Below are positions 2,316 to 64,000 of a stretch of DNA of 64,000 nucleotides, in pieces. The position numbers and the translations under genes are program-made. Origin of the DNA: Macrostomum lignano. Lineage: Eukaryota. The notes below the pieces were generated by a model that was given only the letters and a program-made list of their open reading frames with translations, did no database searches and was not told where the DNA came from. The DNA lies in contig NIVC01001051.1 of the NCBI GenBank assembly GCA_002269645.1, positions 124,001 to 188,000 of the forward strand, written 5' to 3'. The stretch's first letter is position 1. Every line of letters starts with the position of its first letter.

Positions 2316-2319
2316 TAAT

Positions 2320-3592: not shown

Positions 3593-3624
3593 AAGTTGGA
3601 CACATTGGAAACACACATTGGAAA

Positions 3625-11036: not shown

Positions 11037-11156
11037 AACACCGGCTTACGAAGCTGGGCAGGAATGTTTTAATTAAACCGGCTTTGCTACATCAATCAGC
11101 ACTGTGTGGCGGCCTTATGTCCGTATCGACTGTACCACTAGGAAGTTATAAAGAAT

Positions 11157-11636: not shown

Positions 11637-12269
11637 TGACTTTTTGAAATACCCCAATAAATGGTGAATTCTGGTTCGGGATAGGGAACTAAAGAAAAGG
11701 CAAAGCTTTGATGAAAGAAATGTAAATTGCTAAATAGCTGATAACATTGATAAAGAAAAGACTCAGATGCCTGGCTATAGTTAAGTCCGATATGCATTCA
11801 ATACATTGCACGATGTCAGTTAGCAAACCCGATAAACTTTCCGGGTTATCCAAGGAACTACAAGCCGACAAAAATTATATAAATGGTGTAAATGAATCAG
11901 TGGACAATTGCTGCACATAATTAGTCCGCAAAAATAAGCCAGAAGGAATTAGTAACTGCGAAACAGATTAATCATTAAATACACATTGATTAGCACACGG
12001 AAATTGAATGCTTCGTAACTGTAAGCAATTTCGGAGTTGGAGTCTTATATACTCCGGCTTAATAAAAAGGTAATAAAATATTGAAATGGGTAAACAGGCT
12101 GACAACTTAGCAGGCAAAAACATTTGGAAAACGACCAAAAAGCACCGAGAATTCGTTGCGATTGAATTTGACAAGAAAAACTTTTAGAAGCAGAAATGAA
12201 GTAGCACGATTGGGAAAAATACAAAAATCAAATTTATATTGAACGAATTCCTTGGTTTACTTGGGAAAT

Positions 12270-13070
12270 GACTGACACACATCCAATATCCAGCTGACAA
12301 TGAACCTGACAGCCCTGTGACTGAAAACTGACACACACACATCCAGTATCCAGCTGACAATGACCTGACAGCCCTGCGACTAAAAACTGACATACATCCA
12401 ATATCCAGCTGACAATTACCTGACAGCCCTGCGACTAAAAACTGACATACATCCAATATCCAGCTGACAATGACCTGACAGCCCTGCGACTAAAAACTGA
12501 CATACATCCAATATCCAGCTGACAATGACCTGACAGCCCTGTGACTAAAAACTGACATACATCCAATATCCAGCTGACAATTACCTGACAGCCCTGCGAC
12601 TAAAAACTGACATACATCCAATATCCAGCTGACAATGACCTGACAGCCCTGCGACTAAAAACTGACATACATCCAATATCCAGCTGACAATGACCTGACA
12701 GCCCTGTGACTAAAAACTGACATACATCCAATATCCAGCTGACAATGACCCTGACAGCCCTGTGACTGAAAACTGACACATCCAATATCCAGCTGACAAT
12801 GACTCTGACAGCCCTGTGACTGAAAACTGACACACATCCAATATCCAGCTGACAATGACCCTGACAGCCCTGTGACTAAAAACTGACATACATCCAATAT
12901 CCAGCTGACAATGACCCTGACAGCCCTGTGACTGAAAACTGACACACATCCAATATCCAGCTGACAATGACTCTGACAGCCCTGTGACTGAAAACTGACA
13001 CACATCCAATATCCAGCTGACAATGACCCTGACAGCCCTGTGACTGGAAACTGACACACATCCAGCTGAT
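12270..13070. repeat. 55-56-bp satellite in or just below the G-gamma 3' UTR
   Basis: Same unit as 2320-3592, with 1-2 nt variants. Confidence 0.93.
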
Positions 13071-39048: not shown

Positions 39049-41148
39049 TCACTTTGATCGGTCCCAGCGGCAGTTCATGTAGCGTATCGGCGGGTGCCTG
39101 GCTCGCTCAGATCGGCGGGGCGCTGCTGTTCTTGCCGGAGGCTCCGCCGCCGGTGCCGCCGGTGCCGCCGTGCCGGCTCCGGTCGTTGGCGCCGAGTCCA
39201 CCAGTGGGTCGAACCGCTCTCTCGGCTGCGCCGGGTGCGGCGTTCGGATCAGCCGCTGCTGGTTCCATCTGGTGCCGTCGCTGAGCTCGACCGCGTGGTG
39301 TCCCGCCTGACGGAGCACTTGTAGTGGCCGTGAGAGGCGGGTACCCAGCTTGCCCTTCTTGGTGGGCCGTCGGATTCTCACCCACTCGCAGGGTTGGAAC
39401 GTCTCGGGGTGGGCCCTTCGCCTGGCATCGGTGTAGGCCTTGATCTGCTGCTGCCGCGCCTCGATTTGCTGCCGCAGTGCCTGAGGCGTCGCCTCGGTCG
39501 TTGTCATTCCCCCTCCGGGAGACAGCATGGTGATCGCGGTGCGCCACTTCCGACCCAGTATGAGCTCGGCCGGTGACTTGCCCGTCAGGCTGTGCTTGGA
39601 GCTCCGGTAGGCAGACAAGAAGTTGGTCACGGCGTTTTGAAACGGCCTGTTCTCCGCCATGGCCGCTCTGATGCTGGCGAGCAGCGACCGATTGAGACGC
39701 TGCTCCGTCTGGCCGTTGGTCTGCGGATGGTAAAGGGGGGGCTTGACGTGCCGGATGCCCTGCTCGACCAGGAAGTCCGAGAACTCGCTCGATGATGCCG
39801 TACTTCTCCATCTTGTCGAGTTCGGCACCGACCTGCTCCGGCTGCTGGACGGGTCGCACTGCCGGGTCGACCTTGGGCTGGTGTACAGCGCCGGCGCAGC
39901 ATCCTATCGCACCGCTGAAGGTCGTTGGGTACCGCGCCTGCAAGTCCGCCGTCAGGTCGCTGACTTTCGCGATTCCGGGTGGCTGCCCGCTAAGGTCGAC
40001 TCGGAAGCCCAGCTTCTCCATCAGGTCTCTACCGACGATGTTGTCGCCGCCTGGCGCAACGAAGAACCGGTGCTGCATCGCCTTGTCGCCGTAGCGCACC
40101 TCCAGCTCGGTGACACCACTTAGCTGGATTGGCAGTCCGCCGTAGGCACGCAGCTTCGTCGTAGTGGGAGAGGTGACTGCACCTGAGATCCGATCGGCGG
40201 TCTGTCGGGACAGCAGCGACACCCTTGCGCCGCAGTCCACCATCAGGCTGACAGCGGTCCTGTCCGGTCCGAGTTCCAGCGTCGCCCGGACCTCCCTGTC
40301 GCCACCTGGCACTGCGTAGACTGTGATCAGCTCGTCCGCGGCATTGACAGCAGCCTGCTTGCTGCGACAGCAACTCCGGAAGTGGTTCTTCTTGCCACAG
40401 GTGTCGCAGGTCTTGCCCTTGGCCGGACAGGGGGTCGTCGGTCCGTGGTCTCGCCCACAGCGTGTGCAGGCGCCGCCGGGTTTGGCTGTCCTGCCAGCTG
40501 GTGCTGGGCGGTGCCTCCTTTTTGCAGCGACCTTCTGGCCCCTCGGCTGTCGGATCGATTGGACGGCAGCCGCCGTGCTAGACGTTGATGGCGCCATCGC
40601 CTTGGCTTCTTTGGAGGCTTCCTCGATGGAGACCGCGATGCTGAGCGCTTTCGCCAGGTTGAGGTCCTCCACCTTCTCCGTCAGCAGCCTCTCTCGGATT
40701 CTGGGGTTACTGGTCTTCTCAGCCAGCTGGTCTCTGATGAGATCGTCCTGTATCGCGCCGTAGTTGCACAGCTCCGTCAGCTCCCTCAGGGCTGCCACGA
40801 AGGTCTTGACGTCCTCGCCGGGTAGCTGCTGGCGCTGGCGGAAGCGATATCTGGCCACCATCACGTTGGGCTTCTCGCCGAAGATCTTCTCGAGCTCCGA
40901 CTTAGTTGCTGCGAACGTGTCGTTCTCCTTGATTGCTTGGCGTGCTCGAGCAACCCGCTGATCTTCGAATCCAAGCAGAGGAGCAGAAGGCTCTTCTTCA
41001 GCGGTTTCGCCTCTTCCTTCCCTTCGGGCTCCTTGAATTGGGCCGCCTCGTAATAAAATTCAAAGGCCTCAATCCATCGGCTCCATGGTACTGTCGGTGA
41101 TCCGCAGTTCGCTAGGAAGGGCGTGGGTGCAGGGATGCTAGCCGCCAT
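39049..41148 (-). pseudogene. gag-pol remnant: Gag with two CCHC knuckles, aspartic protease, RT stub, C-terminal half of integrase
   Basis: ATG at 41148 (MAASIPAPTPF...WSRWIEAFEFY); frameshift near 40972; CTRCGRDH/CDTCGKKNH; VDCGA protease; ELDKMEKYGIIERV fused out of frame to SEFSDFL...YHPQTNGQTE. RT core, RNase H and the integrase N-terminus are absent. Confidence 0.88.
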
Positions 41149-46950: not shown

Positions 46951-47559
46951 ACTCATTTCCCTAGAAAATGTACAGTTTTTGGAATAGCTTTTTTATAGCC
47001 TTCTCTGCACCCCCACGAGTGGAGAGGCTTACGTTTAGCCATTACAAGTTTAGCAAGAGATTCAAACCACTGTCCTCTGTATAGACAAGTCTGCAGCACT
47101 TTAACAGTGGATGGCAAACCAAGGCAATGTGGGATGGTTTGTAAAAATAGTGAAAAATTAACAAATAACTGATTACAATGCAATCCTACTATGAGTAAAT
47201 TAGTTACACCATGAAACTTTTTAACATTAAGTTTTACATACTTTAAAATTTAAATGGCTTTTAAGAAATACATATTTCCTTGGTTGTTAGACTGCTGCAG
47301 ACTGTGGTAGTGATCGTGGAGCTGGAGATTCCTCTCAGGCTCAGGTCTAATAATTGGCCAGAAAGATTACATGATTAAAGCATGAGAAATGATAACAACT
47401 ATGTCCCAAAAACTTGCTTTTGAAGCTGCAAAGCAGGGACAAGAGATTTTTACAAGGACAAGGCCAGATAAAGAATCCAGCTCATGGCTGTGGGTCAGAT
47501 AAGAGTGGAAAGGAGAAGGAATGACTATTAGAAGGGCAGGAGGGGCGAGAGGGGATAAG

Positions 47560-48700
<1,141 letters not shown>

Positions 48701-50995
48701 ATAAGTTTCAAATGATGCAAAGGACACGGAAAGGCAGAGGTAGAGGCCAGAGTTTGCTTGACATTCTGCATAGCACCCCAGCCAACAATATCAATGTTTG
48801 CCTCAAATCCTAATTTTACATGAATGTACTCTATTTTATGTTTAACTCTATCCTAACTATTAACAAGTTTTTTTGTTTGAGTTTGACCTCCAATTTTAGA
48901 ATACATACAAAAATAGTTCCGGGGATTAGAGTTCCCCAGGTTCAAAATCTGCAGGTTTCAATAGCTTGTCATTACTAAATAGTTGTTTTAAGTATTATAG
49001 TAGCTAAACTTTTTTTGTGCAATAAGGATGCTATAGCATCCTGACTTTCAAAATGACATCTTCAAATTAGACCTTAGAATAGATGCAATGTTGCATCCTA
49101 GTGCCAGCAAAAAACCTCAGTAGGCTATGTACTAGGGATACTGTATAATATCTTGATTTTCTAAATTGTATCCTAAAATTGGACCTTGAATATAATTTTG
49201 CATCTTAGCATCAGCAGAAAAAACCTAGTGTTAATACTAGTAAATAAATTAGTAGTAGACAAAACAGTTGTATCACAATTTGTCTATTTCCATTTTAGTC
49301 TATCAATTAGCAATTAATTTGTCTGTTGGTAGTCAAATTGGTAACAGACAAATTGACTAAAACCTTTTTTATTGCCCTATGGTTATATTTAGTCTTAGGT
49401 CTAAAGATACCATATGCAAAGTCAAAAAGGTTATTTTTGAGGAAATTTCTTGCAAGTAGCTTGCAGGGAGAACAATAATATTTTCTATATTTTGCCATAT
49501 TCCTTGTGCATTAGGCCAATTGCCTATGCTATATATGGATTTTTAGACCTTGCCAGGTTTGATAACTCATAATAATAATAGGAATAAATAATAATAATAA
49601 TAATAATAATAAATATCTAAGTGTTTGTCAATCAAAGCATTTATCAATCTACCCTATTGGTTATTAGAATGTTTTAAAAACCTATATGCAATAGGCCTAG
49701 TTTAAATTGTGTAAGCCAACTTTTTTAAAGATTTATACTAATAAATGACTTATTTTTTATTTTGCTTGCTATTTCCCTTCTGCTACTTATTTCTTTTAAT
49801 GCTATGCTTATATACCTTTATTTGCTAAATGCTATCAAAAATTAAAAAAAAACATTTTAATTATAAAAATAATAACAAAAAACCTTGAAAATAAAAAAAA
49901 ATTTTCTAAATTATTTCTAAACATGCAAAAGTAAAGAAGTTTTTCATATGAACAAAGTTTCTTATGCTCACAAATGAAAAGTCCTTAAGTTCTAGCATCT
50001 TTCTAAACAAAACATGCAAAATTTGAAAGCTAATTCTATAGGACATTTTAATGCTTATTTAATCATTTTTACTTTTATTAGAAATGATACTTTTTGTCAA
50101 AAGCAAAAACTTATATATTATTCTAGCAATATTTCTCAATACATTAGAATATTTGAAGCCCCATATATAATGGGGCTTATATATAAGCCCCATGGGAGCA
50201 TTCAAATTCAAAATTCAAACATTGAAAGCATTAAAAAACATTGTTTTTCAAATATTTGACCCAACTTCTAATTGGGGTATAAGTTTTGTATACCAATTTG
50301 CCAAATGAATATGAATTAATTGGGCTCATTTGATTCTGCCCCTATCTGCAATTGCGCCATCCTCTGTGTTATAAAGGCTGTGTTATTTCAGCTTTTTCAG
50401 CTTTATAACCCTTTTCATCAATTGTCTATCAGACTAGTTGGTAAACAATAAAATTCAGTCAACACTGCAATTAAATTGCAAGCCCACTGCACACAAAGGG
50501 TCATAAAACTCCTTAACTTTTATATGAATATGAATGTACATTTTACACTGTACATTGGCCAAGGAGAGGCCTAAATGGTTGAACTAAATAATTAGGTAAT
50601 AAAATGGAGTCCATTGAAGGCATAAAAAAGTTGATTCTTCCAATATTTGACCCCTTTTCATTTGAAATTTTTCATCAAAAAAGTTATGGAAGATTGCTGA
50701 AAAATTACAATTTTAAAAAGCTAATTTGAAAAAATTGGCCAGACAGTTCTCTAAAAAAGCAATGACAGACAGGCTGACTGACAGACAAACAGCGCAAAAT
50801 TAGTATATAGATTATTCAAAGTACTATATTTATACAGCATATACATATAGCAATGCAGCTATAAAATGTAAACATGGAATCATTATGTTGTATTTAGACA
50901 AGATTTTGATAATATACTTTTACTATTGCATGCTATTGTTCTTACAGTGCTTCTGTTCTCACAACTGATAGCCTACCCAAGAGCCCTGAAATCTT

Positions 50996-53220
50996 ATGGC
51001 CAGCAAAGTTGCAGCAAAATTCGTTTCCTATCGAGTATCTCAGGTTGCCTTAGCCAGCCACTACACTGACAAAGAGCCTGTTGTGGCTGCTGGCAGCTGG
51101 GATGAAGGCCCCAGTAACCGAATTCAACTGCTTGGTTATGGACCCAAACTGGATGCTGAGGGTAGTCCCCGACTTCTTGCCGTGCATCGTTGCCATGGAG
51201 ACGTAATGTGCCTGCGCTTTGATCCAATCTATCAGAATTTGTTTGTTGGCCTCGGCACTGGCGAGCTTGTTGCTATGGCAACGACAGCTGAAGAAGAGCC
51301 GGGTTCCAACAATGGGAGCGGAGAACGGCAGCGACCCCGGCTGCTGCGCCAGCTGGGCCAGGGCTGGCGGCCGTCCACTGACAGCTTCGGCAGCGGCGCC
51401 GTGTCCGCGCTGGCCATTCGTGACGGCTGGCACGCCCTGGCAGGCTGGGAGTCCGGCCGCCTCGTCTGCTGCTCCCTGGCCGTCGAAGTGCCCGACGGCG
51501 GCTGCAGCGATGCGGCGACACTGCGACCGGCCAGCGGTTGCGGCCGCGAGTCGGTGGGGTTGGACTCCTGCTGCGTCACCGGAGCTGATTTTATTGACCA
51601 GAATGCCGCCTGCACGGTGGGTGGCTCTGGGATTTGAGGACCCCTGTCTGGCTGTGCTGGATGCATGGTGGGGAGTAGCGGCTGCTGATTGCAGGATGCA
51701 TGATGTGGAGTAGCGGCTGCTGATTGCAGGATGTGTGGGTGGGTGGGGAGTAGCGGCTGCTGATTGCAGGATGTGTGGGTGGGGAATAGCGGCTGCTGGT
51801 TGCAGGATGTGTGGGTGGGGAATAGCGGCTGCTGGTTGCAGGATGTGTGGGTGGGGAGTAGCCGCTGCTGGTTGCAGGATGTGTGGGTGGGGAGTAGCCG
51901 CTGCTGGTTGCAGGATGTGTGGGTGGGGAATAGCGGCTGCTGGTTGCAGGATGTGTGGGTGGGGAATAGCGGCTGCTGGTTGCAGGATGTGTGGGTGGGG
52001 AGTAGCCGCTGCTGGTTGCAGGATGTGTGGGTGGGGAACAGCGGCTGCTGTGTTGCATTAACTGAGTGAGTCAGACTTGTGTAATTTTATTTTCAAAACA
52101 AGCCTCATCCGTACAACTGCAGGTAAACAGCATGGGCCAGCTGAAACTATGGGACCTGCGCACGGGGCTTGGCCAATACGACAAAGTGCTGACTGTGGCG
52201 GGCGATCCCAAGGCCATGCACTGCGCCAGGAGGCACCCCGCCCAGCCGCACCTGGTTGCCACTGGCGCTTCCGGCGGCTGCCTCTGCCTGTGGGACCTGC
52301 GCCAAGAGAAATTCCCTGTTAGCATTGTTGAACTGGATGACGGACACGTCACGCAGGTGAGGATGGGTGCTACAAGTAACTATGTGCTGCACACCCTTCA
52401 CACCAGCCCCATATAGTGTGCTGCACACCCTTCACACCAGCCCCATATAGTGTGCTGCACACCCTTCACACCAGCCCCATATAGTGTGCTGCACACCCTT
52501 CACACCAGCCCCATATAGTGTGCTGCACACCCTTCACACCAGCCCCATATAGTGTGCTGCACACCCTTCACACCAGCCCCATATAGTGTGCTGCACACCC
52601 TTCACACCAGCCCCATATAGTGTGCTGCACACCCTTCACACCAGCCCCATATAGTGTGCTGCACACCCTTCACACCAGCCCCATATAGTGTGCTGCACAC
52701 CCTTCACACCAGCCCCATATAGTGTGCTGCACACCCTTCACACCAGCCCCATATAGTGTGCTGCACACCCTTCACACCAGCCCCATATAGTGTGCTGCAC
52801 ACCCTTCACACCAGCCCCATATAGTGTGCTGCACACCCTTCACACCAGCCCCATATAGTGTGCTGCACACCCTTCACACCAGCCCCATATAGTGTGCTGC
52901 ACACCCCGTGCTCGATGTTTTTATCGAGCACGATGCTTTTCTATACTCCCATAGCTGCCCCCCGGTCACTGCAGGTGGAGTTCCACCCCGTGCAGGGCGA
53001 TCTGCTGTTCGTGTCCACCATGGCTGGCCAGCTGTACGCCATCAGGCTGAGCGACAGCGGCGGCGGCGGCTCGGCGGCTCTGACGGACAATCCGCACCTG
53101 ACGGCGGTGCTGCCAGCCAGCCAGAAGCTGCCGGTGAATTCTTTCTGTTTAGGCGAAGATTTTCTATGCGCCGGCACTGAGGATGAACTTTTATATGCCG
53201 CCGCAGGCGTTTGCCTGTGA
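50996..53220 (+). CDS. NUP43: nucleoporin Nup43 (WD40), 3 exons, ~366 aa
   Basis: Exons 50996-51616, 52123-52356 and 52975-53220; GT-AG, phase 0. Motifs AKFVS, AGSWD, HGDVMCLRF, TVNSMGQLKLWDLR, HCARRHPAQPHLVATG, LWDLRQ..PVS and VEFHP match Nup43. Confidence 0.9.
51660..52050. repeat. 36-bp minisatellite in NUP43 intron 1
   Basis: Unit gcggctgctggttgcaggatgtgtgggtggggaata, ~11 copies. Confidence 0.92.
52383..52905. repeat. 34-bp minisatellite in NUP43 intron 2, 15 apparently identical copies
   Basis: Unit tgtgctgcacacccttcacaccagccccatatag. Confidence 0.95.
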
Positions 53221-53569
53221 GGCTTAGTTGTGAATTAATGACCTAGGTAGCGATTGACATGTAGGTGATTTAAGTAATTAGATTAGTTCATATTTTCAAT
53301 ACCAGTTTCTAATTACTGTGTCTTTTGTTAAAACTTTAACTAGTTATAATAGAGTAGTGCATTTTTTCAAACTATTTTTAAAGGTTAAAATCATCTTTGC
53401 AGTCTTAATTTAGCATATAAAGTATTGAAAACATGGAAGCATTTATCTCTAATAGTATACGCAATAAAAGTTCAATTTGTGCTTATAATTGTCTATATTA
53501 TGGTGCCTGCTTAATAAAATAGTCTACTATTATCATTTCAAGCTTTTTTAAGTCTTGTAGCTTAGCCTT

Positions 53570-54520
53570 CACCCACTTACTCCTGCAGCAGCCTCTGCTC
53601 ACCCACCCAGTCCTTCAGCAAGCTCTGCTCACCCACCCAGTCCTTCAGCAGCCTCTGCTCACCCACCCAGTCCTTCAGCAGCCTCTGCTCACCCACCCAG
53701 TCCTTCAGCAGCCTCTGCTCACCCACCCAGTCTTTCAGCAGCCTCTGCTCACCCACCCAGTCCTTCAGCAGCCTCTGCTCACCCACCCAGTCCTTCAGCA
53801 GCCTCTGCTCACCCACCCAGTCCTTCAGCAAGCTCTGCTCACCCACCCAGTCCTTCAGCAAGCTCTGCTCACCCACCCAGTCCTTCAGCAGCCTCTGCTC
53901 ACCCACCCAGTCCTTCAGCAAGCTCTGCTCACCCACCCAGTCCTTCAGCAAGCTCTGCTCACCCACCCAGTCTTTCAGCAAGCTCTGCTCACCCACCCAG
54001 TCCTTCAGCAGCCTCTGCTCACCCACCCAGTCCTTCAGCAAGCTCTGCTCACCCACCCAGTCTTTCAGCAAGCTCTGCTCACCCACCCAGTCTTTCAGCA
54101 AGCTCTGCTCACCCACCCAGTCCTTCAGCAGCCTCTGCTCACCCACCCAGTCCCTCAGCAGCCTCTGCTCACCCACCCAGTCCTTCAGCCAGCTCTGCTC
54201 ACCCACCCAGTCCCTCAGCAGCCTCTGCTCACCCACCCAGTCCTTCAGCCAGCTCTGCTCACCCACCCAGTCCCTCAGCAGCCTCTGCTCACCCACCCAG
54301 TCCCTCAGCAGCCTCTGCTCACCCACCCAGTCCCTCAGCAGCCTCTGCTCACCCACCCAGTCCTTCAGCAGCCTCTGCTCACCCACCCAGTCCTTCAGCA
54401 GCCTCTGCTCACCCACCCAGTCCTTCAGCAGCCTCTGCTCACCCACCCAGTCCTTCAGCAGCCTCTGCTCACCCACCCAGTCCTTCAGCAAGCTCTGCTC
54501 ACCCACCCAGTCCTTCAGCC
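53570..54520. repeat. 30-bp minisatellite between NUP43 and RMND1, ~31 copies
   Basis: Unit cacccacccagtccttcagcagcctctgct; it is the source of the periodic 309-aa minus-strand ORF. Confidence 0.95.
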
Positions 54521-54548
54521 ATCACTCTCCAGCCGCATTTCATTCCAG

Positions 54549-55916
54549 TTGCTCTCGTCAGTCCGGCTGTGTGGCCGCCTACTGATTGGCACCCGTGGCC
54601 GCGGCCTGTGCACAGTCCAGGCCCAGCAGAGGCGCCAGCACCGCAAGCAGCAGCATTTCGATGATTCGGCAGCATCAGCGCGGGCAGTGGAGCATCCAAT
54701 CGAAGCAATGGTTCTCGGCGAACGCTTAGATCTGCGCTCATTGGCCCGAGATTTAACCCAGCACGGACTTTACCAGCTGGTGCCGCTGCCCGCTGAACTA
54801 GCTGGCACAGCTTTGATGGCCACATCGCGCGAGCCGTATACAGTTGGCGGGCAGAAGCGGGATGCTGTACTGTTTGACAATGGCGCCGTGGTGCTGTGGA
54901 ATATGTCTGATAAGGAGGCTCAGCAAGCCGTTAAACTGTTTAGCGTGAGTTGGTTGCTCTCTTTCTGGTTAAGTGTGCGTACTTCAAAGAAATGATTGAC
55001 TGACTATTCTTCATTTGAGACTCCCCAATAGCCCCCATGTCTAATCACTGCTGCCGTTGTCCCAATGCGTAGGCATACACCACTGAGCCGCACAGCCAGC
55101 GCGACATACTGGAGCAGTCTGAAAGCATGGCCTTCGTCGCTGAGGACAGCGTCGGCACAACCCGAGTCAGCGAAGATCTCATCCAGCTGCCAGCCGGCCG
55201 CGATCCCTACTCGCTGGTGCTGGAAAAATTTGCATTAAGCGACGCTCTGGCCACTTCTACTAGGTTGGGCCATCTGGAGGCTCAGCTGGATCGGCTGGCT
55301 CGTGATCTGGAGCCTTGGATTGCTAGTTTGAAGGTAATTGCGTTTTTTTCTGTAGATTATCTGGTCCTACTGCTGCCTCAGAGAACCACTGGCCCAGTGA
55401 GTCATTGGGAATGTACGAGTAGAGCGGCCGAGTGGGACCGGAATGTAAAGCGGCCCCAAAAAGATAATCCCGTAACGATTTCACATTCAGTCTCTACTGT
55501 AGTTTCCACCAGCCTAGATGCATGGCAATGTCTATAATACTACTGAACTACTCTACTGTAACACCCAGGAAGGCCAGAACGTTCGCGCACCCGGCGATCT
55601 GATTCTAAGCCGCACCGGGCAGCTCTACCGTCTGAGATTCGCCGCCAGCGTCTGCGACTCGCCGCCAGATTTCTACTGGGAGCGCGAGGACTTGGAGGCG
55701 CTCTACGGCCGCATGTCCAACGTGCTCACCGTAGCCAGGAGAGCTCGCCTGCTCAATACTCGGCTGCAATTCTGCCTGGATCTGTGCGACCTATTGCGCA
55801 ATCAGAAGCACGAATTGGAAGGCCACAGACTCGAGTGGATAATTATCTTTCTTATATTCACGGAGATTATTTTTGCTATTGTGCACCTCAGCTTGGAGTT
55901 GCGCCGTTCTGAGTAA
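54549..55916 (+). CDS. RMND1: RMND1/Sif2 (DUF155) mitochondrial translation factor, 3 exons; no genomic start ATG at the 5' end of the frame
   Basis: Exons 54549-54944, 55073-55333 and 55569-55916. Motifs FDNGAVVLWN, LEKFALSDAL, PDFYWEREDLEALY, RRARLLNTRL and RLEWIIIFLI. The frame begins right after the acceptor tttcattccag. Confidence 0.9.
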
Positions 55917-56413
55917 CTGTCAGAATTTTCACTTAGCGCTACTGTACGCGACAGAATTCACCATTTGTGTCCGCTACCAGATTATGATTCTAATAAAATT
56001 AACTTGGCTTTTTCATCATCATGTGCATTTTCGCCAATTAAAATCAATAGCAAAAAACCAATAGCCGTCTTCTCTTCGCCTTTATTGTTTGTCATATGGG
56101 TAACAAATCAAGGTGATTAACGCTTGCTTGTATATATGCAGTTCATAACTGAGGTTAGTTGATGAATTATATTTTTAGCAGATTTTTTTATTCAAAAAAC
56201 ACATTAAAAGACAGTAAATTTGCAAGTTAATTAATTAATAGAATTTGATGCCATGCATTCACGTGTTAACATTGTAAATACATTGCTGCAATGCTCAGCA
56301 CTTGTACACAGAAACGGAAATAATTGAAATAACCAGAATAAAAACAAAAACACACAATGGTTCCAATTGTCAGTGTTAAGCGCACCTTGCACTATTTAAA
56401 GTTGCCATCTGCA

Positions 56414-56638
56414 TCAGGTGCGCGAAGATTTCTCGCACTCTAGCAGGCACTCTCTGACCATCATGCGGCAGGTGTGAATATTCTTCTTCAGCCGTTCAAT
56501 AGCCATCTTGTTGCCAGCGTAGCTGGGCCGAACGTCGCGGCCCATCTCTTCGATGACCTGCAGCAGCTGGTTGTACTTGCTAGGCGGTTGGTTGCCGGCC
56601 GGCCCGTCCGGCTTCTTGGATGGCGCGGCGAGATCCAT
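56414..56638 (-). CDS. CDK2AP1: CDK2-associated protein 1/2 (DOC-1 family, NuRD subunit), 74 aa
   Basis: SKYNQLLQVIEEMGRDVRPSYAGNKMAIERLKKNIHTCRMMVRECLLECE matches the DOC-1 domain. ATG at 56638, preceded by an acceptor-like cccgcag; an additional upstream exon cannot be excluded. Confidence 0.9.
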   Translation of the reverse strand: MDLAAPSKKPDGPAGNQPPSKYNQLLQVIEEMGRDVRPSYAGNKMAIERLKKNIHTCRMMVRECLLECEKSSRT

Positions 56639-56999
56639 GCTAGCTGCGGGATGCGGCAATCAGCAAGTTTGACTTAAAACCTTCAAAATCAAGATTCTAA
56701 GGGTTAAAAGCTTACATGGGAACACAATACAAAAATGAGCAGACTTATTAGTACCCTATATTCCAGTGCCTTTGCACAGAGAGAGCAAGCACCCCAGTAC
56801 TTCTGGATGTCCCTTTATGCTATCTTTGGATTGTCCCTATATGATTTGGTAAGACACAGGTGAGAAATGAGCTTGCGACCATCTTGCAACCATTTTTGTG
56901 TCCCGAAAATGAGGCAAACTGCTGCAAGATGGGTACAAGTAAGTTTGTATAACCATTAGCCATTTAAGCTACTAAATAAGTAGAGTGAAAGAAATATGC

Positions 57000-58965
57000 A
57001 ATCACTGCAGCGGTCCATGAGGCAAATTGCTTGCCAAGCTTTTCCCACCAAGGTTTGCCCACAATGCTTTTTCCTGCAGCACATCTACTACATCAGTCAT
57101 ACACGCCCAACACTCAGCCGACACGGCTGGGTGGCGAGAGGTCTGGCCAAGGTAAGTCGCAAAAATGCTGACCCAAAAAATAGTTACGTATAGTATAGTT
57201 ACTCCTGTCGTTTACCCGAAATTGCATTAATTTTGCTTTAGGGTTTCTTTCATACAGGTAAGACGCATTTTTGGTCAAAAAGTAAGTCACACAGCTGGGT
57301 GAAATTTTGAAGTTGGGCATATATGACATCAGTAGATTTTAGATTTCAGTAGATGTAGTAGATTTTGTCCACATTGCTCCCTAATTGCTTAGCTATAATA
57401 GAGATTTAGGGGACAGTGTGACATGGAATATGCATGAATTAATAGCTCACAGATGAACCCTTTGTATGCATATGGAAATGAAAATCTACAAGAAAAATAA
57501 GCATTTATTAAGCAGTTACCATTAAAATTTTTTGATTGGGTAAATATCTTTATTAATAATTACTAAGCTTTGGGAGGCAATGCAAACAAATGTGCTACAG
57601 AAAAAAAAAGCATTGTGGGCAAACTTGGGTAGGAAAAGCTCAGTAGGCCATTTGCTCACAGGCAATTCACTCATGGGCAAATTGTATTGGAGGAAAATCT
57701 TGGCAGGGAAACTCAATGGGCAATTCACTTATAGGCAGGCACAAAGAATAAAAATATTGGGGGGGAGGCAAGACATGGGCAAACTCTAATATTTTTGGAC
57801 AGAAAAGCCTAAATGGAGAATAAAGACTAAATGCTATAATATACTTATTTGACATAACCTGGGGCCTAGTGGGCTGCATAAAAACACCTGTGCAACCCTT
57901 GGGCTCCAGTGCTGAAAAGTATATAGCCACAAGGCTTCATCCCCTAGACTTAGTTTACCTCTGTATGGTGCAGTTGCTGACATTGTAGCCAAGATCCCAT
58001 TATCTAGACAGTGGGCCCTACCAGTCACCTATGCAAGAATATACCTGGTAAAACTCCCACTAACAAGATGGGACTCCCAGTCTATAAGGCAGATAAAGGT
58101 TCTTGACCCCAATTGTACTAGAAATTTCCAATTAAGGGACTATGCAAGACATACAAAAGACAGTCTAATACTGGAAATAAGGACTTTTTCTTAGGGGGTC
58201 TTTTAGCTAGTAAATGATTCTAGACTACAATTCCCTCTTAAGCCCCAGGATCCCAAGGATGGATATTTGGATAATAGGGTAATGCCATTTTAATGTCTCC
58301 TCCTACATGGGTTTGATGTAGCAAGGCATAGGGAAGCAAAAGTCTCAGAGCTCTCTTATGGTGCACATCTTATAGGGACTTTTTTGTTATTGCTATAATT
58401 ATTTTGTTGAATTTGGCTTATATTTAGTGATCTACTTTGGTCCTGAGCTCCTATTCCATGCCTTTCAATAGGTTCACTCACTATTCCCACTTTATACTAG
58501 GACTTATGATAAATAAGTAAATAGACAGAAGCAACAAAGAGTTCAATGACTAATGCCCTTAATTGCTAGCCCTTAAACTTGGGAGCAGGAGAAATGCCTA
58601 CAGATGAATTGCCCATCAAAATTTACCTGCCAAGATTTGCCCGCAGTGCATTTTGCCCATGAGCGAATTGCCCATGGAGATTTATCTACCAAAAATTGCT
58701 TGCCAAGATTTCCCATAGTGCAATTTGCCTACAAGCAAATTGCCTGCCAAGATTTTTCCTACCAAGGTTTGCCCGCAATGCTTTTTCCTGCAGTGCATTG
58801 CCCTACCCTCTCCCAAAAAAATATGCATTTGATATGTAGTTTACTATCAAAATGTTTTGATCAGGTAAATCTCTTTATTAAAATTTACTAAGCATTAAGG
58901 AGGCAATATGCAGACAAAATCTGCCACGTGGCTAAATGTGCTGCAGGAAAAAGCATTGCGAGTTC
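57000..58965. repeat. fragments of a degenerate repeat family in both orientations
   Basis: Motif tttgcccgcaatgctttttcctgcag and gggcaaattg-type subrepeats at ~57050, 57590-57760 (inverted), 58590-58800 and 58940 (inverted). Confidence 0.55.
57096..57327. mobile_element. MITE family copy 3 (TIR gtcatacacgcccaac)
   Basis: gtcatacacgcccaac ... gttgggcatatatgac; same core as 32664-32956. Confidence 0.65.
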
Positions 58966-60660
58966 ATAGTGTGGTAGGCCAGTCTACCATTGGGGTGAAT
59001 GATAGCAGGCCTCCAGTGCGGGCAAGGCGGATGACCAAGTTCCACGGGATGACGGTTGACATCCAACTTAAATGACCATGCCGCTAAAAGACCACTCAAC
59101 TACAATTATGACTACCTTCCCCCTGGAATTGAGGACCCTAGCAGATAGAGTATCTAAGGAAAAGAATTAATACATCAATTTGTGCAATTTTCTAGCTTAC
59201 GAGTGCCAAGACTACACAAGCGGCAATTCAAGTCTAAGACCACCATTTTCTGGTGTTAGCTAATGACAGCAAACCGCCAACTGGTGACTTTCAAGTTTGA
59301 ACCCAATTTTGAACCCAACCATTTTCTATATTAATCTTCTCCACCCCCATCTCAATAGATTAGGGCCTAGTTTATAGATTAATTTCCTATAGTTAAAAGA
59401 ATTTAACAAATAGAACTTGACAATTGACAATACATTAATCTCTGCATATATATATCTATATAAAACCAGTTTTGATTATATTACTGGTATATAATATACC
59501 AGTGTCCAGTGTCAGGATTATATGCCAGTGTATGCCAAAATGAAATTTGTTTCCACAGCTTTTATATATAAATGTATGAGTACACTAATAGATTTATATT
59601 GTACACAAAAATATGCCAAGATAAAAAAATTACTAGCTATATTTTAAGCTTGTGCTTTTTTAATATTTATTTTCCCATTCTTTTTAGATCATGCTTGGGT
59701 GCAACCTAAGGATTCACCCAACCATTTCTATTGGTAACACACACATGCAAGTTGCTATTGGACAGAATAGTAGTCACGTGACTACTCTCAGCCAATAGCA
59801 ATTTACATGTGTATATTGCCAATACCATACATAGGCTCAGGTCAGGTTCTTCTACTTCTAGAACTGGTTTAGAGTGCTAAGCCTAGCTTATCATGGACAA
59901 ATGTGATCTGACGACTGACTTCCCAAAATTGTGTTGTTTGGATAAATGAAATTAATCAGTTTAACCAGACTCAAATTAAACGCAAACTCACTACTTTCAA
60001 ACCATTTGTCATTGCAGCTTTAATTGAGGCCCAAAATTACGTAATTTGTTTAGTCAAACGCACGCGCATAAACAGAAACAGCTAAACAAAATTTATTACC
60101 GTTAATATATGAAATACACATGTTAGCACTAAGCCAAATGCTCATCTGGTTTACTTAAGTAGCTTAATGCTTAATAAGCGCTTAATGAATCCAAAAAGAC
60201 AGTAAGTCGAAATCCTGTGTGCACTACAATCTACAAGGACGACTACTACACAATGACGATGACTTTTCAGTTATATTTATTGTTTATGACATTGCATTAC
60301 CCTTTTATTATGAGCATATATATAAATACACACTTGTACACTCATGTAAATTATTACCATGCAACTACATGTACGTGAAGGATACAAAATAATCTTTAAT
60401 TTTTAGTCACGAGTGCTAATAAAGGATTATTGTATGCGTGCTAGCTGACTATTCTTTCATGGGACGCAAAGCGTTTGTGATTAACTAGTCTTCACATAAC
60501 TTTTCTCCTCAATACGAGTCTATTTCGCTCTTAAAGACCAAATTTACATGTATTTCATGTACCACATGTATTATTTGCGACACGCGAGTTTTTGTAATGC
60601 GTCGACAATTTTGTGCAAATAAGCATTCAAATAAATTAAATATGTACCAGCTTATATTTG

Positions 60661-60952
60661 CCTGAAGCACCCCAGAGGATGTCTCAAAGAAATCCGACAG
60701 GCCGTCCGATGTTCGCACAACAGCGCTCGTGCCATGATACAGCGCCATGACGGTGGAAATCAGCTGCTCTTGCACGTTGTGCGCACGAAGCACCATTGGG
60801 AGCACGGCCGTCACGACCGAGTCAAAAGCCTTCCTGAAGTCAATAAAGAGAGCTAATCAGGCTCGACTGGCGGGTCCGTGCTTCCTCGATGACTCAGCAA
60901 AGATCCAGGATCTGCGCCACTGTACCGCGATGGTTCCGGAACCCGTTCTGAA
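60661..60952 (-). pseudogene. non-LTR retrotransposon (LINE, RTE-like) reverse transcriptase fragment
   Basis: QNGFRNHRGTVAQILDLC*VIEE...IDFRKAFDSV...LY..TSAVVRTSDGLSDFFETSSGVLQG: typical LINE RT domains, one in-frame stop, truncated on both sides. Confidence 0.85.
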
Positions 60953-60973
60953 CCCGTTCTGCTTATTTACTAC

Positions 60974-62998
60974 TGATGGGTTTCGGCCTTTTCGGCTGTA
61001 GAAAAGCCTCCGGGCCTCAGGTCTCAGAAATAAATCAATTAGAGTCCTGGCCCCCCACTCCTGTCAGATGGTCAGCCCCAAGGTAGCTTGATCTGTGGCG
61101 AGCAGTCTAGGTCCTATAGCTAAGAGAGGGACAGCGAGAGACAAGCAGGGAGAATTTCGAAGGTAGAGTTGGCTAATCCGCAGATTAACTAACCCGCTGC
61201 CACCAGCCCGTGCGTACTGGCTCACCAAACCAGAACTTTCGAAATCGGGCTTCCGACTAGAAGGGGCAATTAGCACTTACCTGCCAACTAGTGTCTTTTT
61301 GCTGTCAATCTCGAAGTCTGCATAGCCGATGATAAGGGACACTGCTGGGACTAGATCGCATTGGCCATGCAGGTACAGAGGGGACTTGTGCAGGGGATTC
61401 TTGCAGTGGCGAGTCTATGGGGTAGCTACATGTACTATTACATTGCTAAATACGAGGGATTGTACTTTTGGCCTTCAACGTGCTAACCAGCCTCTCGTAG
61501 CGCTGATGATAGACTAACTCGAACTTTAGAGATCGCATGATTCATTACCCGAGCCGCTTGGCGAATTTAGAGTGCACGGAAGTACATCTCTAGCGCCGAT
61601 TTTGCACTATTGGCAATTTCGCTAACTGATTTGATAAATGGATCAACTGAGAGCCGCCTTGCCATTGGTCTACTGCGACCGGCGCCTACTAGCTTAGTTC
61701 CTCATCTGAGCCATCGGCGAACAAAGAAATAAAACCGATAAAATAAATGCCGGATTTAACCTTCTCACTGATATCACACTTCAGATTGAATTGGAGTTTC
61801 AGACTACTAACAGTATTATTGAATGATTTATGCCTCAATAACAGCACTACTGAACAAAATTAGCAAAAGTGTGCGCCTAATCCAGCTACTGAAATAGGGG
61901 ACAGATAAGGAATCACCCAATCAAGCAAGTCTAGGTAGCCTCTCACCCAACCAATCAGAAACTCAAAGCCCGGAGACCAGGTAATCCACAGTGACCGAAT
62001 CGGCTTGGTGCTTCGCAGCTGTAGGCCCGGAATGATGCTGTCACAATCGCTGCAGATAGCTAGCAGGTGATGGATCTTAACTTCGATGCTTGATGCAATC
62101 AACCGGGGGGAGACGTCCTGGATGATGAGGGGGGGGGGGGTTGTTGCAATCCGGGGATCAAGAGACGACGGTCGTGACTCCGGAATGGGAGCCGCCAACG
62201 TAAAGTGGTTCGAGTCCCGGGAGCCCGAAGGTGTAGAACAGTGCGTGCCAAAAACATCGGTTTATATAGCCGCCAACTGGACTGCAATTTGTTAAAATGG
62301 AACACCTCGACGCTGATTGGCTGAGCCGATTTGTTATAACTGATGTCGAATTTTCTGATTTGGCTGAGCTTGTTGCCATCCAACCTCACGTGACCAAAAG
62401 ATCCTATTAGTTCCCTCGGGGCCATAAAATACGCCAGGTGTTGTCATAAACCACTCAAAATCGCTACATTATGATTTATGACCTTTCGCGTAGGAATGAC
62501 AGAAATTAATGAAAAAATATGCATTAGAAAGATCTTCTTAAGTAGAAGGTGAAGATGGTGAAGAGAAATCGCTAATCGCTAATCCCAAAGTACTTTTAGG
62601 GGTAAAACGCATAGCTGTCAGAGCTGTCACACGCTTGAGTGAACACGAACAATAGGCTCCAACTTCATAAATCTGATGGCCTGTCAAAAATGAAGAGAAA
62701 AAAGCTACCGCCCGCATCCTCTCAGACCATCTGGCGCCAGCCTCAACACTGAGTGAAGCGCAGGTGGCTGTCAGACAAGCTCACAAGGAATGATTTATGA
62801 CCCCAAAAGTAACGAAAACCGCGCCTATGTTATAGTGAATACAGGTATGGCAAAATCATAGCTACAGAAATCCTACTAGTATGAATTTTAGGAAAATTAC
62901 ATAAAAAGAAGAAAAATGTCCATGCCTGCTCTTAGTAGGCTAACAGGCTTGGAACCCATGTGCGAGCGTGAGATTAGGGAAAAAGTGCGTCCTCATCA
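60974..62998 (-). mobile_element. ~2-kb solo-LTR-like element, copy 2
   Basis: Collinear with 36494-38481; TGATGGG...CCTCATCA ends; flanks ctac/ccac (4-bp TSD with one mismatch); TATATAAA plus two CCAAT boxes on the minus strand. Confidence 0.75.
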
Positions 62999-63289
62999 CC
63001 ACATTTAGTTGGTCATACTGCCAAATTAAGCTATATAATATACAAGCTGTTGAAACCCGCGGATTTTGAACCCGGGGAATTCCAATAACCGGAACTACTT
63101 TTGCATGTATTCTGAAGTCTAAGGCCATACACAAACGAAAACTTGTTAATAGTTAGTAGGATAGAGGTAGACATAAAATGGAGCACATTCGTGTAAAATT
63201 AGGGTTTGAGACATTGTTGGCTGGGGTACTGCGCAGAATGTCAGGCAATGTCTGTCTGACTCTAAAACATATATTGCTAAACTCTGGTC

Positions 63290-64000
63290 TCTCCCTGACT
63301 CTCCCTACGTCCCTTGGATCCTTTAAAATTTCTATCGTCTCTTTGTTTCCTCTCATCTCTCTCGTCCCTCGTCTCTCGTCTCTCCTCTCTCCCCTCTTCT
63401 CTCGTATCTTCCCTCATCTCTCTTCTCTTTCATCTCTCTTATCTCATCCCTTGTCTCTTCTTTTCTCTCTCCTCTCCTCTCTCCTCTCCTCTCTCCTCTC
63501 TCCCCTCTCCTCTCACCCCCTCTTCTCTCTTATCTTCCTTCTCCTTTATATTCTTTTCTCTCTTCTCTTAACTCTCTCCTCTGCTCTCTCATCTTTCCCC
63601 TCTTCTCTCGTATCTTCCCTCACCTCTCTTCTCTTTCATCTCTCTTATCTCATCCCTTCTCTTCTTTTCTCTCTCCTCTCCTCTCTCCTCTCCCCCTCTT
63701 CTCTCGTATCTTCCCTCATCTCTCTTCTCTTTCATCTCTCTTATCTCATCTCTTGTCTCTTCTTTTCTCTCTCCTCTCCTCTCTCCTCTCTACTTTTTCG
63801 TTTTCTCTCTCCTCTCCTCTCTCCTCTCTCTCTCCCTCTCCTCTCTCCTCTCACCCCCTCTTCTCTCTTATCTTCCTTCTCCTTTCTATTCTTTTCTCTC
63901 TTCTCTTAACTCTCTCCTCTACTCTCTCATCTCTCCCCTCTTCTCTCGTCTCTTCCCTCACCTCTTTTCTCTCTCGTCTTTGCTCTCTCATCTTTCCTTT
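63290..64000. repeat. CT-rich low-complexity tract with internal duplications
   Basis: Blocks such as cttctctcgtatcttccctca recur; the tract runs off the window end. Confidence 0.85.

What the first reader, a model, noticed from the sequence alone, without database searches (positions are those of the whole stretch)
54530..54720. RMND1 has no start codon: its frame begins exactly at a splice acceptor, as if a spliced leader supplies the AUG
Seen: tttcattccag|TTG CTC TCG TCA GTC CGG... gives LLSSVRLCGRLLIGTRGRGLCTVQAQ, which is Arg/Leu/Ser-rich and lacks acidic residues, like a mitochondrial presequence. The first in-frame ATG is ~54 codons in, at HPIEAM, which aligns inside the conserved RMND1 region (human HCTAF). 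Starting there would lose targeting. Between the NUP43 stop and this acceptor there is only an AT-rich 3' UTR and a 30-bp array, with no convincing ATG-plus-donor exon. Established: flatworm spliced leaders end in AUG, and that AUG can act as the initiator Met (shown in Schistosoma). Inference: SL-AUG joined in phase 0 gives M-LLSSVRL..., so a mitochondrial protein would depend on trans-splicing for both its start codon and its import signal.
Basis: partly seen in the sequence, partly recalled or inferred. Interest (0 to 1): 0.85.

Follow-up and report, generated by a model that had tools for sequence, protein, structure and literature searches.

The report
Flatworm RMND1 borrows spliced-leader start codon
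The window is Macrostomum lignano DNA, and its mitochondrial RMND1 gene has no start codon of its own; it most likely takes its AUG from the trans-spliced leader, a mechanism known in flatworms since 2006, so this is a clean new example and not a new mechanism.

Summary
A consensus acceptor (CATTTCATTCCAG|TTG, 54548|54549) opens a 3-exon RMND1/DUF155 gene. No ATG lies between the NUP43 3'UTR and codon 54 of the frame.

One correction: the frame does not begin at the acceptor. It stays open for 342 codons upstream, through a stop-free, ATG-free 30-bp minisatellite.

The window is Macrostomum lignano, Mlig_3_7 scaffold NIVC01001051.1. The published SL of this species ends in ATG, and its trans-splice acceptor motif [T/C]TNCAG matches this site.

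GenBank's transcript-based annotation calls RMND1 "partial" in all three genomic copies, with the CDS starting 3-6 nt after this acceptor. Because the frame is open upstream, that places the mRNA 5' end at the acceptor.

UniProt/WormBase models fuse NUP43 to RMND1 through the same acceptor. NUP43 upstream is flagged trans-spliced, and the repeat-adjusted spacer is about 32 nt, so the pair looks like an operon.

All 19 aligned orthologues carry at least 55 residues N-terminal to the block where the internal Met lies. I could not retrieve direct SL-junction reads.

It is a new member of a known kind (Cheng et al. 2006). Interest is modest.

The parts
50936..50947 (+). Putative SL trans-splice acceptor of the upstream gene NUP43 (TTGTTCTTACAG|TG). 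An SL AUG joined here opens only a 7-codon uORF (ATGTGCTTCTGTTCTCACAACTGA) ahead of NUP43's own ATG at 50996.
   Evidence: Sequence. NUP43 (Mlig017047.g1) is flagged {TRANSSPLICED} with Length 1494 in the supplement of PMC5816591.
50996..53220 (+). NUP43 coding region, exons 50996-51616, 52123-52356 and 52975-53220. It equals PAA72926.1 (366 aa).
   Evidence: Exact reconstruction of P0156 from GT..AG exons. PDB Nup43 hits at E=3.6e-32.
53125..53139 (+). Cryptic donor inside the last NUP43 exon (AAGCTGCCG|GTGAAT, exon end 53133). The UniProt/WormBase ParaSite models use it to fuse NUP43 in frame to the 54549 acceptor.
   Evidence: P0002, P0158 and P0159 read ...AVLPASQKLP|LLSSVRL. Donor located.
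53463..53565 (+). NUP43 3'UTR end. AATAAA signals lie at 53463 and 53513, and the inferred mRNA 3' end is about 53565.
   Evidence: Signals. The 3' end is computed from the published mRNA length of 1494 and a trans-splice site at 50948.
53569..54519 (+). 30-bp minisatellite filling the intercistronic spacer (31.7 copies). It has no stops in any + frame and no ATG. Most units carry CTTCAG, and all 27 such matches are in frame 0 with RMND1.
   Evidence: TRF. Frame and motif count. Copy number is 31, 29 and 9 units in the three genomic copies.
54536..54548 (+). Pyrimidine-rich tract and acceptor CATTTCATTCCAG. This is the proposed SL trans-splice site, and TTCCAG matches [T/C]TNCAG.
   Evidence: Identical in all three copies.
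54549..54707 (+). 53 codons encoding the presequence-like N-terminus (LLSSVRLCGRLLIGTRGRGLCTVQAQQRRQHRKQQHFDDSAASARAVEHPIEA) with no genomic start codon. The first 38 residues, counting the SL Met, have a net charge of +8 and no acidic residue.
   Evidence: GC1/2/3 of 0.74/0.50/0.69 resembles the neighbouring CDS. The basic patch RRQHRK aligns to the orthologue consensus KRxxRKK.
54661..54663 (+). Out-of-frame ATG (22-codon ORF) lying between the acceptor and the first in-frame ATG. Ribosomes that skip the SL AUG would meet it first.
   Evidence: Present in all three copies.
54708..54710 (+). First genomic in-frame ATG (Met55 of the SL-initiated protein). It aligns to the Y/F of the conserved V-x-A-Y/F strand.
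54549..54944 (+). RMND1 exon 1 (donor GTGAGT).
   Evidence: Matches PAA72927.1.
55073..55333 (+). RMND1 exon 2 (acceptor GCGTAG, donor GTAATT).
   Evidence: Matches PAA72927.1.
55569..55916 (+). RMND1 exon 3 with the C-terminal hydrophobic segment (residues 308-327) and stop TAA at 55914-55916. AATAAA lies at 55992.

Best explanation
NUP43 and RMND1 form an operon-like pair in Macrostomum lignano. The downstream RMND1 pre-mRNA is SL trans-spliced at the acceptor 54548|54549.

The 35-nt spliced leader ends in AUG. Joined in phase 0 to TTG CTC TCG..., that AUG becomes the initiator. The product is a 335-aa RMND1 that begins M-LLSSVRLCGRLLIGTRGRG..., a basic, acid-free sequence that looks like a mitochondrial presequence.

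The genome supplies the presequence and the SL supplies only the start codon. Un-trans-spliced RNA has no AUG that can give a full-length protein.

Shown: gene structure, absence of any usable genomic ATG, the acceptor motif, the organism and its SL sequence (literature), 5'-partial transcript-based models in three copies, and the orthologues' need for an N-terminal extension.

Inferred: that SL is actually joined at 54549, that ribosomes start at the SL AUG, and that the N-terminus acts as an import signal.
For: 1. Organism. The window is identical to M. lignano NIVC01001051.1 (L003 = window 48552-61916). The proteins are PAA72926.1 and PAA72927.1.

2. Spliced leader. The M. lignano SL is CGGTCTCTTACTGCGAAGACTCAATTTATTGCATG, followed in the SL RNA gene by the donor GTAAG. 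The trans-splice acceptor motif is [T/C]TNCAG (PMC8629364). The site here is TTCCAG|TTG. Macrostomum SLs are conserved, and their final ATG is described as a likely translation start codon (PMC10468722).

3. Annotation. GenBank's transcript-based annotation was built with the TBONE pipeline, which sets gene boundaries from SL-read peaks and poly(A) data. It labels RMND1 'partial' in all three copies, with the CDS starting at codon 2 or 3 after the acceptor. The frame is open for 342 codons upstream, so a 5'-partial ORF call must run to the transcript's 5' end. That puts the 5' end 1-6 nt after the AG. No other AG lies between 54549 and 54562.

4. No genomic ATG between the NUP43 3'UTR and codon 54, in all three copies.

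5. Orthologues. The conserved block begins upstream of Met55, with Ala54 conserved in at least 90% of sequences. All 19 aligned orthologues have at least 55 residues N-terminal to it, and a basic patch is shared.

6. Operon context. The two genes are on the same strand. NUP43 is flagged {TRANSSPLICED}. The spacer is 983 nt, of which 951 nt is the array, which matches the published repeat-adjusted peak of about 100 bp. In the other two copies both genes carry the same transcriptional-unit prefix, Mlig030699 (g3/g2 and g4/g5).

7. Precedent. The flatworm SL AUG serves as initiator Met (Cheng et al. 2006, as cited in PMC9851317, and in PMC3510090).

8. RMND1 is an inner-mitochondrial-membrane protein in humans (PMC5264221).
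Against: - No SL-containing read or cDNA for this junction could be retrieved. No held supplement lists the RMND1 genes Mlig030699.g1/g2/g5 with a TRANSSPLICED flag.
- The annotated CDS starts are 3 and 6 nt downstream of the acceptor, not exactly at it, and I cannot explain the offset.
- The SL AUG sits in a weak vertebrate-type context (U at -3, U at +4), whereas the internal AUG at 54708 has G at -3 and G at +4. Some initiation at Met55 cannot be excluded.
- The array upstream offers 27 further CTTCAG sites in the same frame.
- No dedicated mitochondrial-targeting predictor was available. The presequence call rests on composition only, and the hydrophobic moment was unremarkable.
Confidence: 0.8

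Rival explanations
1. The mRNA is trans-spliced, but ribosomes mostly ignore the SL AUG and start at the first genomic AUG (54708). The product is a 281-aa RMND1 without a cleavable presequence.
For: The internal AUG has a strong context (GCAATGG). The SL AUG has U at -3 and U at +4 (sequence). In E. granulosus not every in-frame SL AUG is thought to be used.
Against: - Met55 lies inside the conserved first strand, and starting there removes the nearly invariant Ala54.
- All 19 aligned orthologues have at least 55 residues upstream of that block.
- An out-of-frame AUG at 54661 precedes it.
- The 53 upstream codons are open, show coding-like GC1/2/3, and share a basic patch with orthologues.
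- The first 25 residues from Met55 have net charge 0, with 3 acidic residues.
Confidence: 0.08
2. RMND1 is made as a NUP43-RMND1 fusion protein. A donor inside the last NUP43 exon (53133|53134, GTGAAT) is cis-spliced in frame to the 54549 acceptor, as in UniProt A0A1I8H443, A0A1I8FYD7 and A0A1I8HCT1.
For: - Three independent gene models of 672-674 aa use exactly this junction.
- The donor GTGAAT is as good as the gene's real donors.
- Flatworms often share acceptors between cis- and trans-splicing (PMC12582326).
Against: - GenBank's transcript-based annotation keeps two separate genes in all three copies.
- The fusion deletes the last 28 NUP43 residues, which align collinearly to the C-terminus of vertebrate Nup43 (VNSF.CLGEDFLCAGTEDELLY against VNSLDVLGQNLVCGTDAEAIY). 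That stretch alone is not statistically significant.
- The fusion buries a presequence-like segment in the middle of a nucleoporin.
- Fusing neighbours is what an ab initio predictor does when an ORF lacks an ATG.
- It could exist as a minor by-product of the polycistronic precursor.
Confidence: 0.05
3. The 5' end lies further upstream. Either SL is joined at one of the in-frame CTTCAG sites in the minisatellite, giving M-(QPLLTHPVLQ)n-RMND1, or an unprocessed RNA is translated from an in-frame CUG in the array.
For: The array has no stops, and its 27 CTTCAG matches (most units) are all in frame 0 with RMND1. An in-frame CTG occurs in every unit.
Against: - All three evidence-based models end their 5'-partial ORF at codon 2-3 after the proximal acceptor. 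With an open upstream frame they would extend further if the transcript did.
- Array length varies from 9 to 31 units between copies with no sign of constraint.
- The repeat peptide has no counterpart in orthologues.
Confidence: 0.04
4. A cis-spliced mini-exon ending in ATG at 53500-53502 (ATG|GTGCCT) supplies the start codon from an independent promoter inside the NUP43 3'UTR.
For: It is the only upstream ATG followed directly by GT in phase 0, and it is conserved in all three copies.
Against: - The donor GTGCCT lacks the +4A and +5G of the species' GT[G/A]AG consensus.
- It lies inside the NUP43 mRNA, before that mRNA's inferred 3' end at about 53565.
- No annotated transcript includes it.
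Confidence: 0.02

Closest known systems
Flatworm mRNAs that use the 3'-terminal AUG of the spliced leader as initiator methionine (Cheng, Cohen, Ndegwa and Davis, J Biol Chem 2006; 'slORFs' in the sense of slORFfinder, PMC9851317)
   Same: The SL ends in AUG. The acceptor sits at a codon boundary of the main ORF. No genomic AUG can give an N-terminus that matches orthologues. The arrangement is the one reported for more than 40 S. mansoni cDNAs, 35 S. japonicum genes and many E. granulosus clusters, including mitochondrial proteins such as a NADH-ubiquinone oxidoreductase subunit and COX6B.
   Different: This case is in a free-living macrostomorph, not a neodermatan parasite, and the SL sequence is different. 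Here SL joining and initiation are inferred and not shown by cDNA. The first 54 residues, not just a few, depend on the SL AUG.
SL-resolved operons of Macrostomum lignano (Wudarski et al. 2017, PMC5730564; Ustyantsev and Berezikov 2021, PMC8629364)
   Same: Two same-strand genes, with the upstream one trans-spliced. The spacer is inflated by a tandem repeat and is about 32 nt once the repeat is subtracted. In two of the three copies both genes carry one transcriptional-unit name, Mlig030699.
   Different: Those papers do not discuss use of the SL AUG as a start codon. I did not find this gene pair listed as an operon in any text I could read.
RMND1 / Sif2 / Mrx10 family (Pfam PF02582, DUF155), inner-mitochondrial-membrane proteins
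   Same: DUF155 at E=3.5e-32 over residues 107-282. A C-terminal hydrophobic segment. 26-40% identity to animal orthologues across the whole conserved region.
   Different: At 335 aa it is shorter than 18 of the 19 aligned orthologues (351-521 aa), with only 51 residues before the conserved block. No genomic start codon.

Membership tests
SL-AUG-initiated flatworm mRNA (Cheng et al. 2006 type) | The organism's spliced leader ends in AUG immediately before its donor site | tested here: met
   The organism was identified as M. lignano. The published SL is ...TTTATTGCATG followed by GTAAG (PMC8629364). It is conserved in M. cliftonense and M. hystrix. The SL RNA gene is not in the window.
SL-AUG-initiated flatworm mRNA (Cheng et al. 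2006 type) | The mRNA is SL trans-spliced at an acceptor directly upstream of the ORF | tested here: inconclusive
   The acceptor matches [T/C]TNCAG. The evidence-based 5'-partial CDS starts 3-6 nt after it in three copies. No SL-junction read, cDNA or TRANSSPLICED flag for RMND1 could be retrieved.
SL-AUG-initiated flatworm mRNA (Cheng et al. 2006 type) | The SL AUG is in frame with the main ORF with no intervening stop | tested here: met
   ATG|TTG CTC TCG... is phase 0 and the frame is open to the RMND1 stop at 55914-55916.
SL-AUG-initiated flatworm mRNA (Cheng et al. 2006 type) | No genomic AUG gives an N-terminus matching conserved orthologues | tested here: met
   The first in-frame ATG is codon 54, inside the conserved block. 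The orthologues all extend at least 55 residues further N-terminal.
SL-AUG-initiated flatworm mRNA (Cheng et al. 2006 type) | Translation starts at the SL AUG in vivo | not testable with these tools
   This needs ribosome profiling, N-terminal proteomics or a reporter assay.
RMND1 / DUF155 family | DUF155 domain above the Pfam gathering score | tested here: met
   PF02582, 112.3 bits against a cut-off of 27, E=3.5e-32, profile positions 2-174 of 174.
RMND1 / DUF155 family | C-terminal membrane-spanning segment | tested here: met
   LEWIIIFLIFTEIIFAIVHL at residues 308-327 of 335, aligned to the conserved RLEWMIIILI..EV.FE block. Identified from hydrophobic sequence only, with no topology predictor.
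RMND1 / DUF155 family | N-terminal mitochondrial presequence | tested here: inconclusive
   7 Arg, 1 Lys and no acidic residue in the first 38 aa, with several R-2/R-3 motifs, but an unremarkable hydrophobic moment. TargetP and MitoFates were not available.
M. lignano SL-resolved operon | Same-strand neighbours with a repeat-adjusted intergenic distance under 1 kb | tested here: met
   From the NUP43 3' end at about 53565 to the acceptor at 54548 is 983 nt, of which 951 nt is the array. The criterion comes from PMC8629364.
M. lignano SL-resolved operon | Both genes lie on one primary transcript | tested here: inconclusive
   In two copies both genes share the transcriptional-unit prefix Mlig030699 (g3/g2 and g4/g5). 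In the window copy NUP43 is Mlig017047.g1 and RMND1 is Mlig030699.g1. No read-level data were available.

The most novel reading that the evidence does not exclude
The intercistronic minisatellite is not inert. Most of its 30-bp units carry a trans-splice acceptor consensus (CTTCAG; 27 matches), all in frame with RMND1, and the array has no stop codons. Choice of SL acceptor, together with the 9-31-unit copy-number differences between gene copies, could therefore generate a ladder of RMND1 isoforms with variable M-(QPLLTHPVLQ)n N-terminal extensions that mask or alter the import signal.
Probability: 0.05. Interest if true: 0.55.

Novelty: new member of a known kind. Interest (0 to 1): 0.3.

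Why it matters
The finding is a clean case outside the parasitic flatworms in which a conserved mitochondrial protein cannot be made in full length from its genomic sequence alone.

It has a practical consequence. The reference annotations of this model organism get the gene wrong in two ways. GenBank calls it 'partial' in all three copies, and UniProt/WormBase ParaSite fuse it to NUP43. Both errors follow from ignoring the SL AUG.

The same error may affect other M. lignano genes, because 30-39% of them are trans-spliced. It could be corrected by prepending the SL AUG at mapped trans-splice sites.

It does not reveal a new mechanism.

Tried and rejected
- The genomic ORFs 50996-51637 and 54549-54995 are not on record.
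- The search for homologous proteins returned only a 28%-identical protein for the full-length query and nothing for the N-terminal query. It appears blind to M. lignano.
- The M. lignano SL 3' half is not in the window with up to 3 mismatches, and there were no Rfam hits.
- The SL-exon junction (28 nt) is absent from JGI metagenome contigs.
- Supplements of PMC8629364, PMC5730564, PMC5173321, PMC7806878 and PMC12896417 hold no entry for the RMND1 genes. PMC5816591 lists only NUP43.
- Wasik et al. 2015 (PNAS) is not held.
- The closest non-Macrostomum homologues, P0003 and P0005, have 5' UTRs of 204 and 324 nt with their own ATG, so they say nothing about SL use.
- There is no solved structure for RMND1.
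- The three genomic copies are too similar for a dN/dS test. The pre-Met55 segment shows one non-synonymous and one synonymous difference, and the rest of exon 1 shows three synonymous ones.
- Codon log-odds for the pre-Met55 segment favour frame 0 only weakly.
Full report
**What is in the sequence**

The stretch reads ...gcatttcattccag|TTGCTCTCGTCAGTCCGG, with the AG at 54547-54548. Three exons, 54549-54944, 55073-55333 and 55569-55916, have canonical GT..AG borders. They encode 334 residues ending RRSE-TAA.

The product carries a full-length DUF155 (RMND1/Sif2/Mrx10) domain at 112 bits, E=3.5e-32. It also has a C-terminal hydrophobic segment.

The first in-frame ATG is at 54708, codon 54. 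An out-of-frame ATG at 54661 lies before it.

Between the upstream gene's stop (53218-53220) and the acceptor there are only four ATGs, at 53238, 53259, 53433 and 53500. All are in an AT-rich 3'UTR, with ORFs of 1-29 codons. Only ATG|GTGCCT at 53500 is followed by a phase-0 GT, and that donor is poor.

The rest of the spacer is a 30-bp minisatellite at 53569-54519, with 31.7 copies.

The RMND1 frame does not begin at the acceptor. It runs open for 342 more codons, back to 53520. The array has no stop in any + frame and no ATG.

Most units also contain CTTCAG, and all 27 such matches are in frame with RMND1. TTCCAG at 54543-54548 is the last motif-matching acceptor. No other AG follows until 54562, which is out of frame.

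**Whose genome it is**

An exhaustive HMMER search found a 99%-identical 672-aa protein. Its cluster consists of Macrostomum lignano entries.

Fetching the encoding contigs showed that window 48552-61916 is identical to GCA_002269645.1 scaffold NIVC01001051.1:172552-185916. The window's RMND1 is PAA72927.1 and the upstream gene is the nucleoporin NUP43, PAA72926.1.

Two further copies of the gene pair exist, on NIVC01000698.1 and NIVC01000671.1. That fits the known duplications of the DV1 line.

All three copies keep CATTTCATTCCAG|TTGCTCTCG and lack any ATG after the 3'UTR. Their arrays hold 31, 9 and 29 units.

**What the public annotations do with it**

GenBank's models derive from a genome-guided transcriptome. 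Its gene boundaries were set by the TBONE pipeline from peaks of SL-containing reads and from poly(A) data (PMC5730564).

In all three copies RMND1 is labelled 'partial'. The CDS starts at LSSVRL (window 54552) or SSVRL. Because the frame is open far upstream, a 5'-partial ORF must extend to the very end of its transcript. These models therefore place the mRNA 5' end 1-6 nt after the AG at 54548. I cannot explain the small offset.

The older WormBase ParaSite/UniProt models (A0A1I8H443, A0A1I8FYD7, A0A1I8HCT1) instead fuse NUP43 to RMND1. They use a donor inside the last NUP43 exon (CCG|GTGAAT, exon end 53133) and the same acceptor, in frame...ASQKLP|LLSSVRL.

That fusion removes the last 28 NUP43 residues. 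Those residues align collinearly with the C-terminus of Xenopus Nup43, although the stretch alone is not significant. I read the fusion as a predictor's way of finding an ATG, or at most a minor by-product of the precursor RNA.

Two annotation pipelines failed to find a start codon, each in its own way, and both of them use this acceptor.

**Does the protein need the upstream residues**

In an alignment with 19 homologues of 26-40% identity, the conserved region begins with V-x-A-Y/F. In the window protein this is I52-E53-A54-M55, numbering the SL Met as 1. Ala54 is conserved in at least 90% of sequences. A basic patch (consensus KRxxRKK) aligns to RRQHRK.

Every homologue has at least 55 residues N-terminal to that block. 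Starting at Met55 would therefore cut into the conserved fold and leave no leader at all.

The 53 codons before Met55 have coding-like GC1/2/3 of 0.74/0.50/0.69, against 0.64/0.41/0.65 for the rest of the gene. With an added Met, the first 38 residues hold 7 Arg, 1 Lys and no acidic residue. [quoted passage not shown]

No targeting predictor was available. The presequence call is based on composition, and the hydrophobic moment was unremarkable.

**Mechanism**

M. lignano has one described SL, CGGTCTCTTACTGCGAAGACTCAATTTATTGCATG. In the SL RNA gene it is followed by GTAAG. About 30% of genes are trans-spliced and the acceptor motif is [T/C]TNCAG (PMC8629364). The SL and its terminal ATG are conserved in two other Macrostomum species (PMC10468722).

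Joining the SL at 54549 gives ...UUGCAUG|UUG CUC UCG, in phase 0, and so M-LLSSVRL....

The context is operon-like:
- NUP43 is on the same strand and is flagged {TRANSSPLICED} with an mRNA length of 1494 (supplement of PMC5816591).
- With its likely acceptor at 50947|50948 (TTCTTACAG|TG), that length puts its 3' end at about 53565, 4 nt before the array.
- The spacer is then 983 nt, of which 951 nt is repeat. This matches the published observation that repeats inflate operon spacers whose adjusted length peaks near 100 bp.
- In the two other copies both genes carry the transcriptional-unit prefix Mlig030699.

For NUP43 itself, the SL AUG would open only a 7-codon uORF ahead of the gene's own ATG.

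**What remains inferred**

I could not retrieve any read or cDNA carrying the SL joined to 54549:
- the contig index refuses spliced proteins;
- the word-indexed protein search does not see M. lignano;
- no held supplement lists the RMND1 genes;
- the junction is absent from JGI metagenomes.

The SL AUG has a weak vertebrate-type context and Met55 a strong one, so some initiation at Met55 is possible. My confidence that the SL AUG is the functional start of the main product is about 0.8.

**Comparison with what is known**

Use of the flatworm SL's terminal AUG as initiator Met was established by Cheng et al. (2006). [quoted passage not shown]

In E. granulosus, 143 of 187 SL clusters are predicted full length from the SL ATG. 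Some require it to match orthologue N-termini, and these include mitochondrial proteins. Use of the SL AUG is conserved for 10 orthologues of S. japonicum genes (PMC3510090). All reported SLs of parasitic flatworms end in ATG (PMC12582326).

The present case meets the testable defining features of that class, except for direct proof of trans-splicing and of initiation. It is a new member of a known kind. What it adds is a well-anchored example in a free-living macrostomorph, and the observation that both reference annotations of this gene are wrong for this reason.

Noticed in passing
window 53569-54519; L001 5676-5945; L002 5106-5975: The 30-bp spacer minisatellite has no stops in all three + frames and no ATG. 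Most units carry CTTCAG, and all 27 matches are in frame 0 with RMND1. Unit number differs between the three genomic copies (31, 9 and 29).
   Followed up: partly
window 53125-53139 and 54549: UniProt/WormBase ParaSite models A0A1I8H443, A0A1I8FYD7 and A0A1I8HCT1 are in-frame NUP43-RMND1 fusions. They use a cryptic donor (CCG|GTGAAT) in the last NUP43 exon and the RMND1 acceptor. This is probably an annotation artefact, possibly a minor cis-spliced by-product.
   Followed up: partly
window 50936-50995: The likely NUP43 trans-splice acceptor is TTGTTCTTACAG|TG. The SL AUG joined there would create a 7-codon uORF (MCFCSHN*) that ends 27 nt before NUP43's own ATG at 50996.
   Followed up: partly
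window 54552 versus L001/L002 position 6001: GenBank's 5'-partial CDS starts 3 nt after the acceptor in the window copy but 6 nt after it in the two other copies, although the sequence around the site is identical. The cause of the offset is unknown.
   Followed up: no
window 51667-52057 and 52383-52906: Both NUP43 introns are largely filled by minisatellites. One has a 36-bp unit in 10.8 copies. The other has a 34-bp unit in 15.4 copies at 100% identity, which suggests very recent expansion or assembly collapse.
   Followed up: no
window 1950-13064, 24739-25545, 27913-28663: The window is packed with further tandem arrays (periods 21, 22, 29, 30, 32, 44, 55-56 and 60), many of them creating long spurious ORFs. 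The 55-56-bp unit at 2331-3593 recurs at 12271-13064.
   Followed up: no
window 56414-56638 (-): A CDK2AP-family gene (74 aa, PF09806) converges on RMND1. The two stop codons are 497 nt apart, so the 3'UTRs may approach or overlap.
   Followed up: no
window 22580-26397 (-): Several exons of a vigilin-like multi-KH-domain gene (KH_1, KH_Vigilin), with a 22-bp tandem array at 24739-25545 in one intron.
   Followed up: no
window 39049-40864 (-): Retroelement remnant. A 585-aa ORF has a weak aspartyl-protease hit and zinc-knuckle-like CxxC motifs. It overlaps a 259-aa ORF that reads like an integrase C-terminus but has no Pfam hit. The two are in different frames.
   Followed up: no
window 47367-48771 (-) and 63178-63909 (+): Long Ser/Leu/Pro/Phe-rich ORFs that arise from CT/AG-rich simple sequence, including an (AG)n tract at 48407-48683. 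They are probably not genes.
   Followed up: no
tool behaviour (versus 34, 36): The word-indexed protein search returned no M. lignano protein, although the cluster representative (A0A1I8H443) is in the collection and the exhaustive search found it.
   Followed up: no
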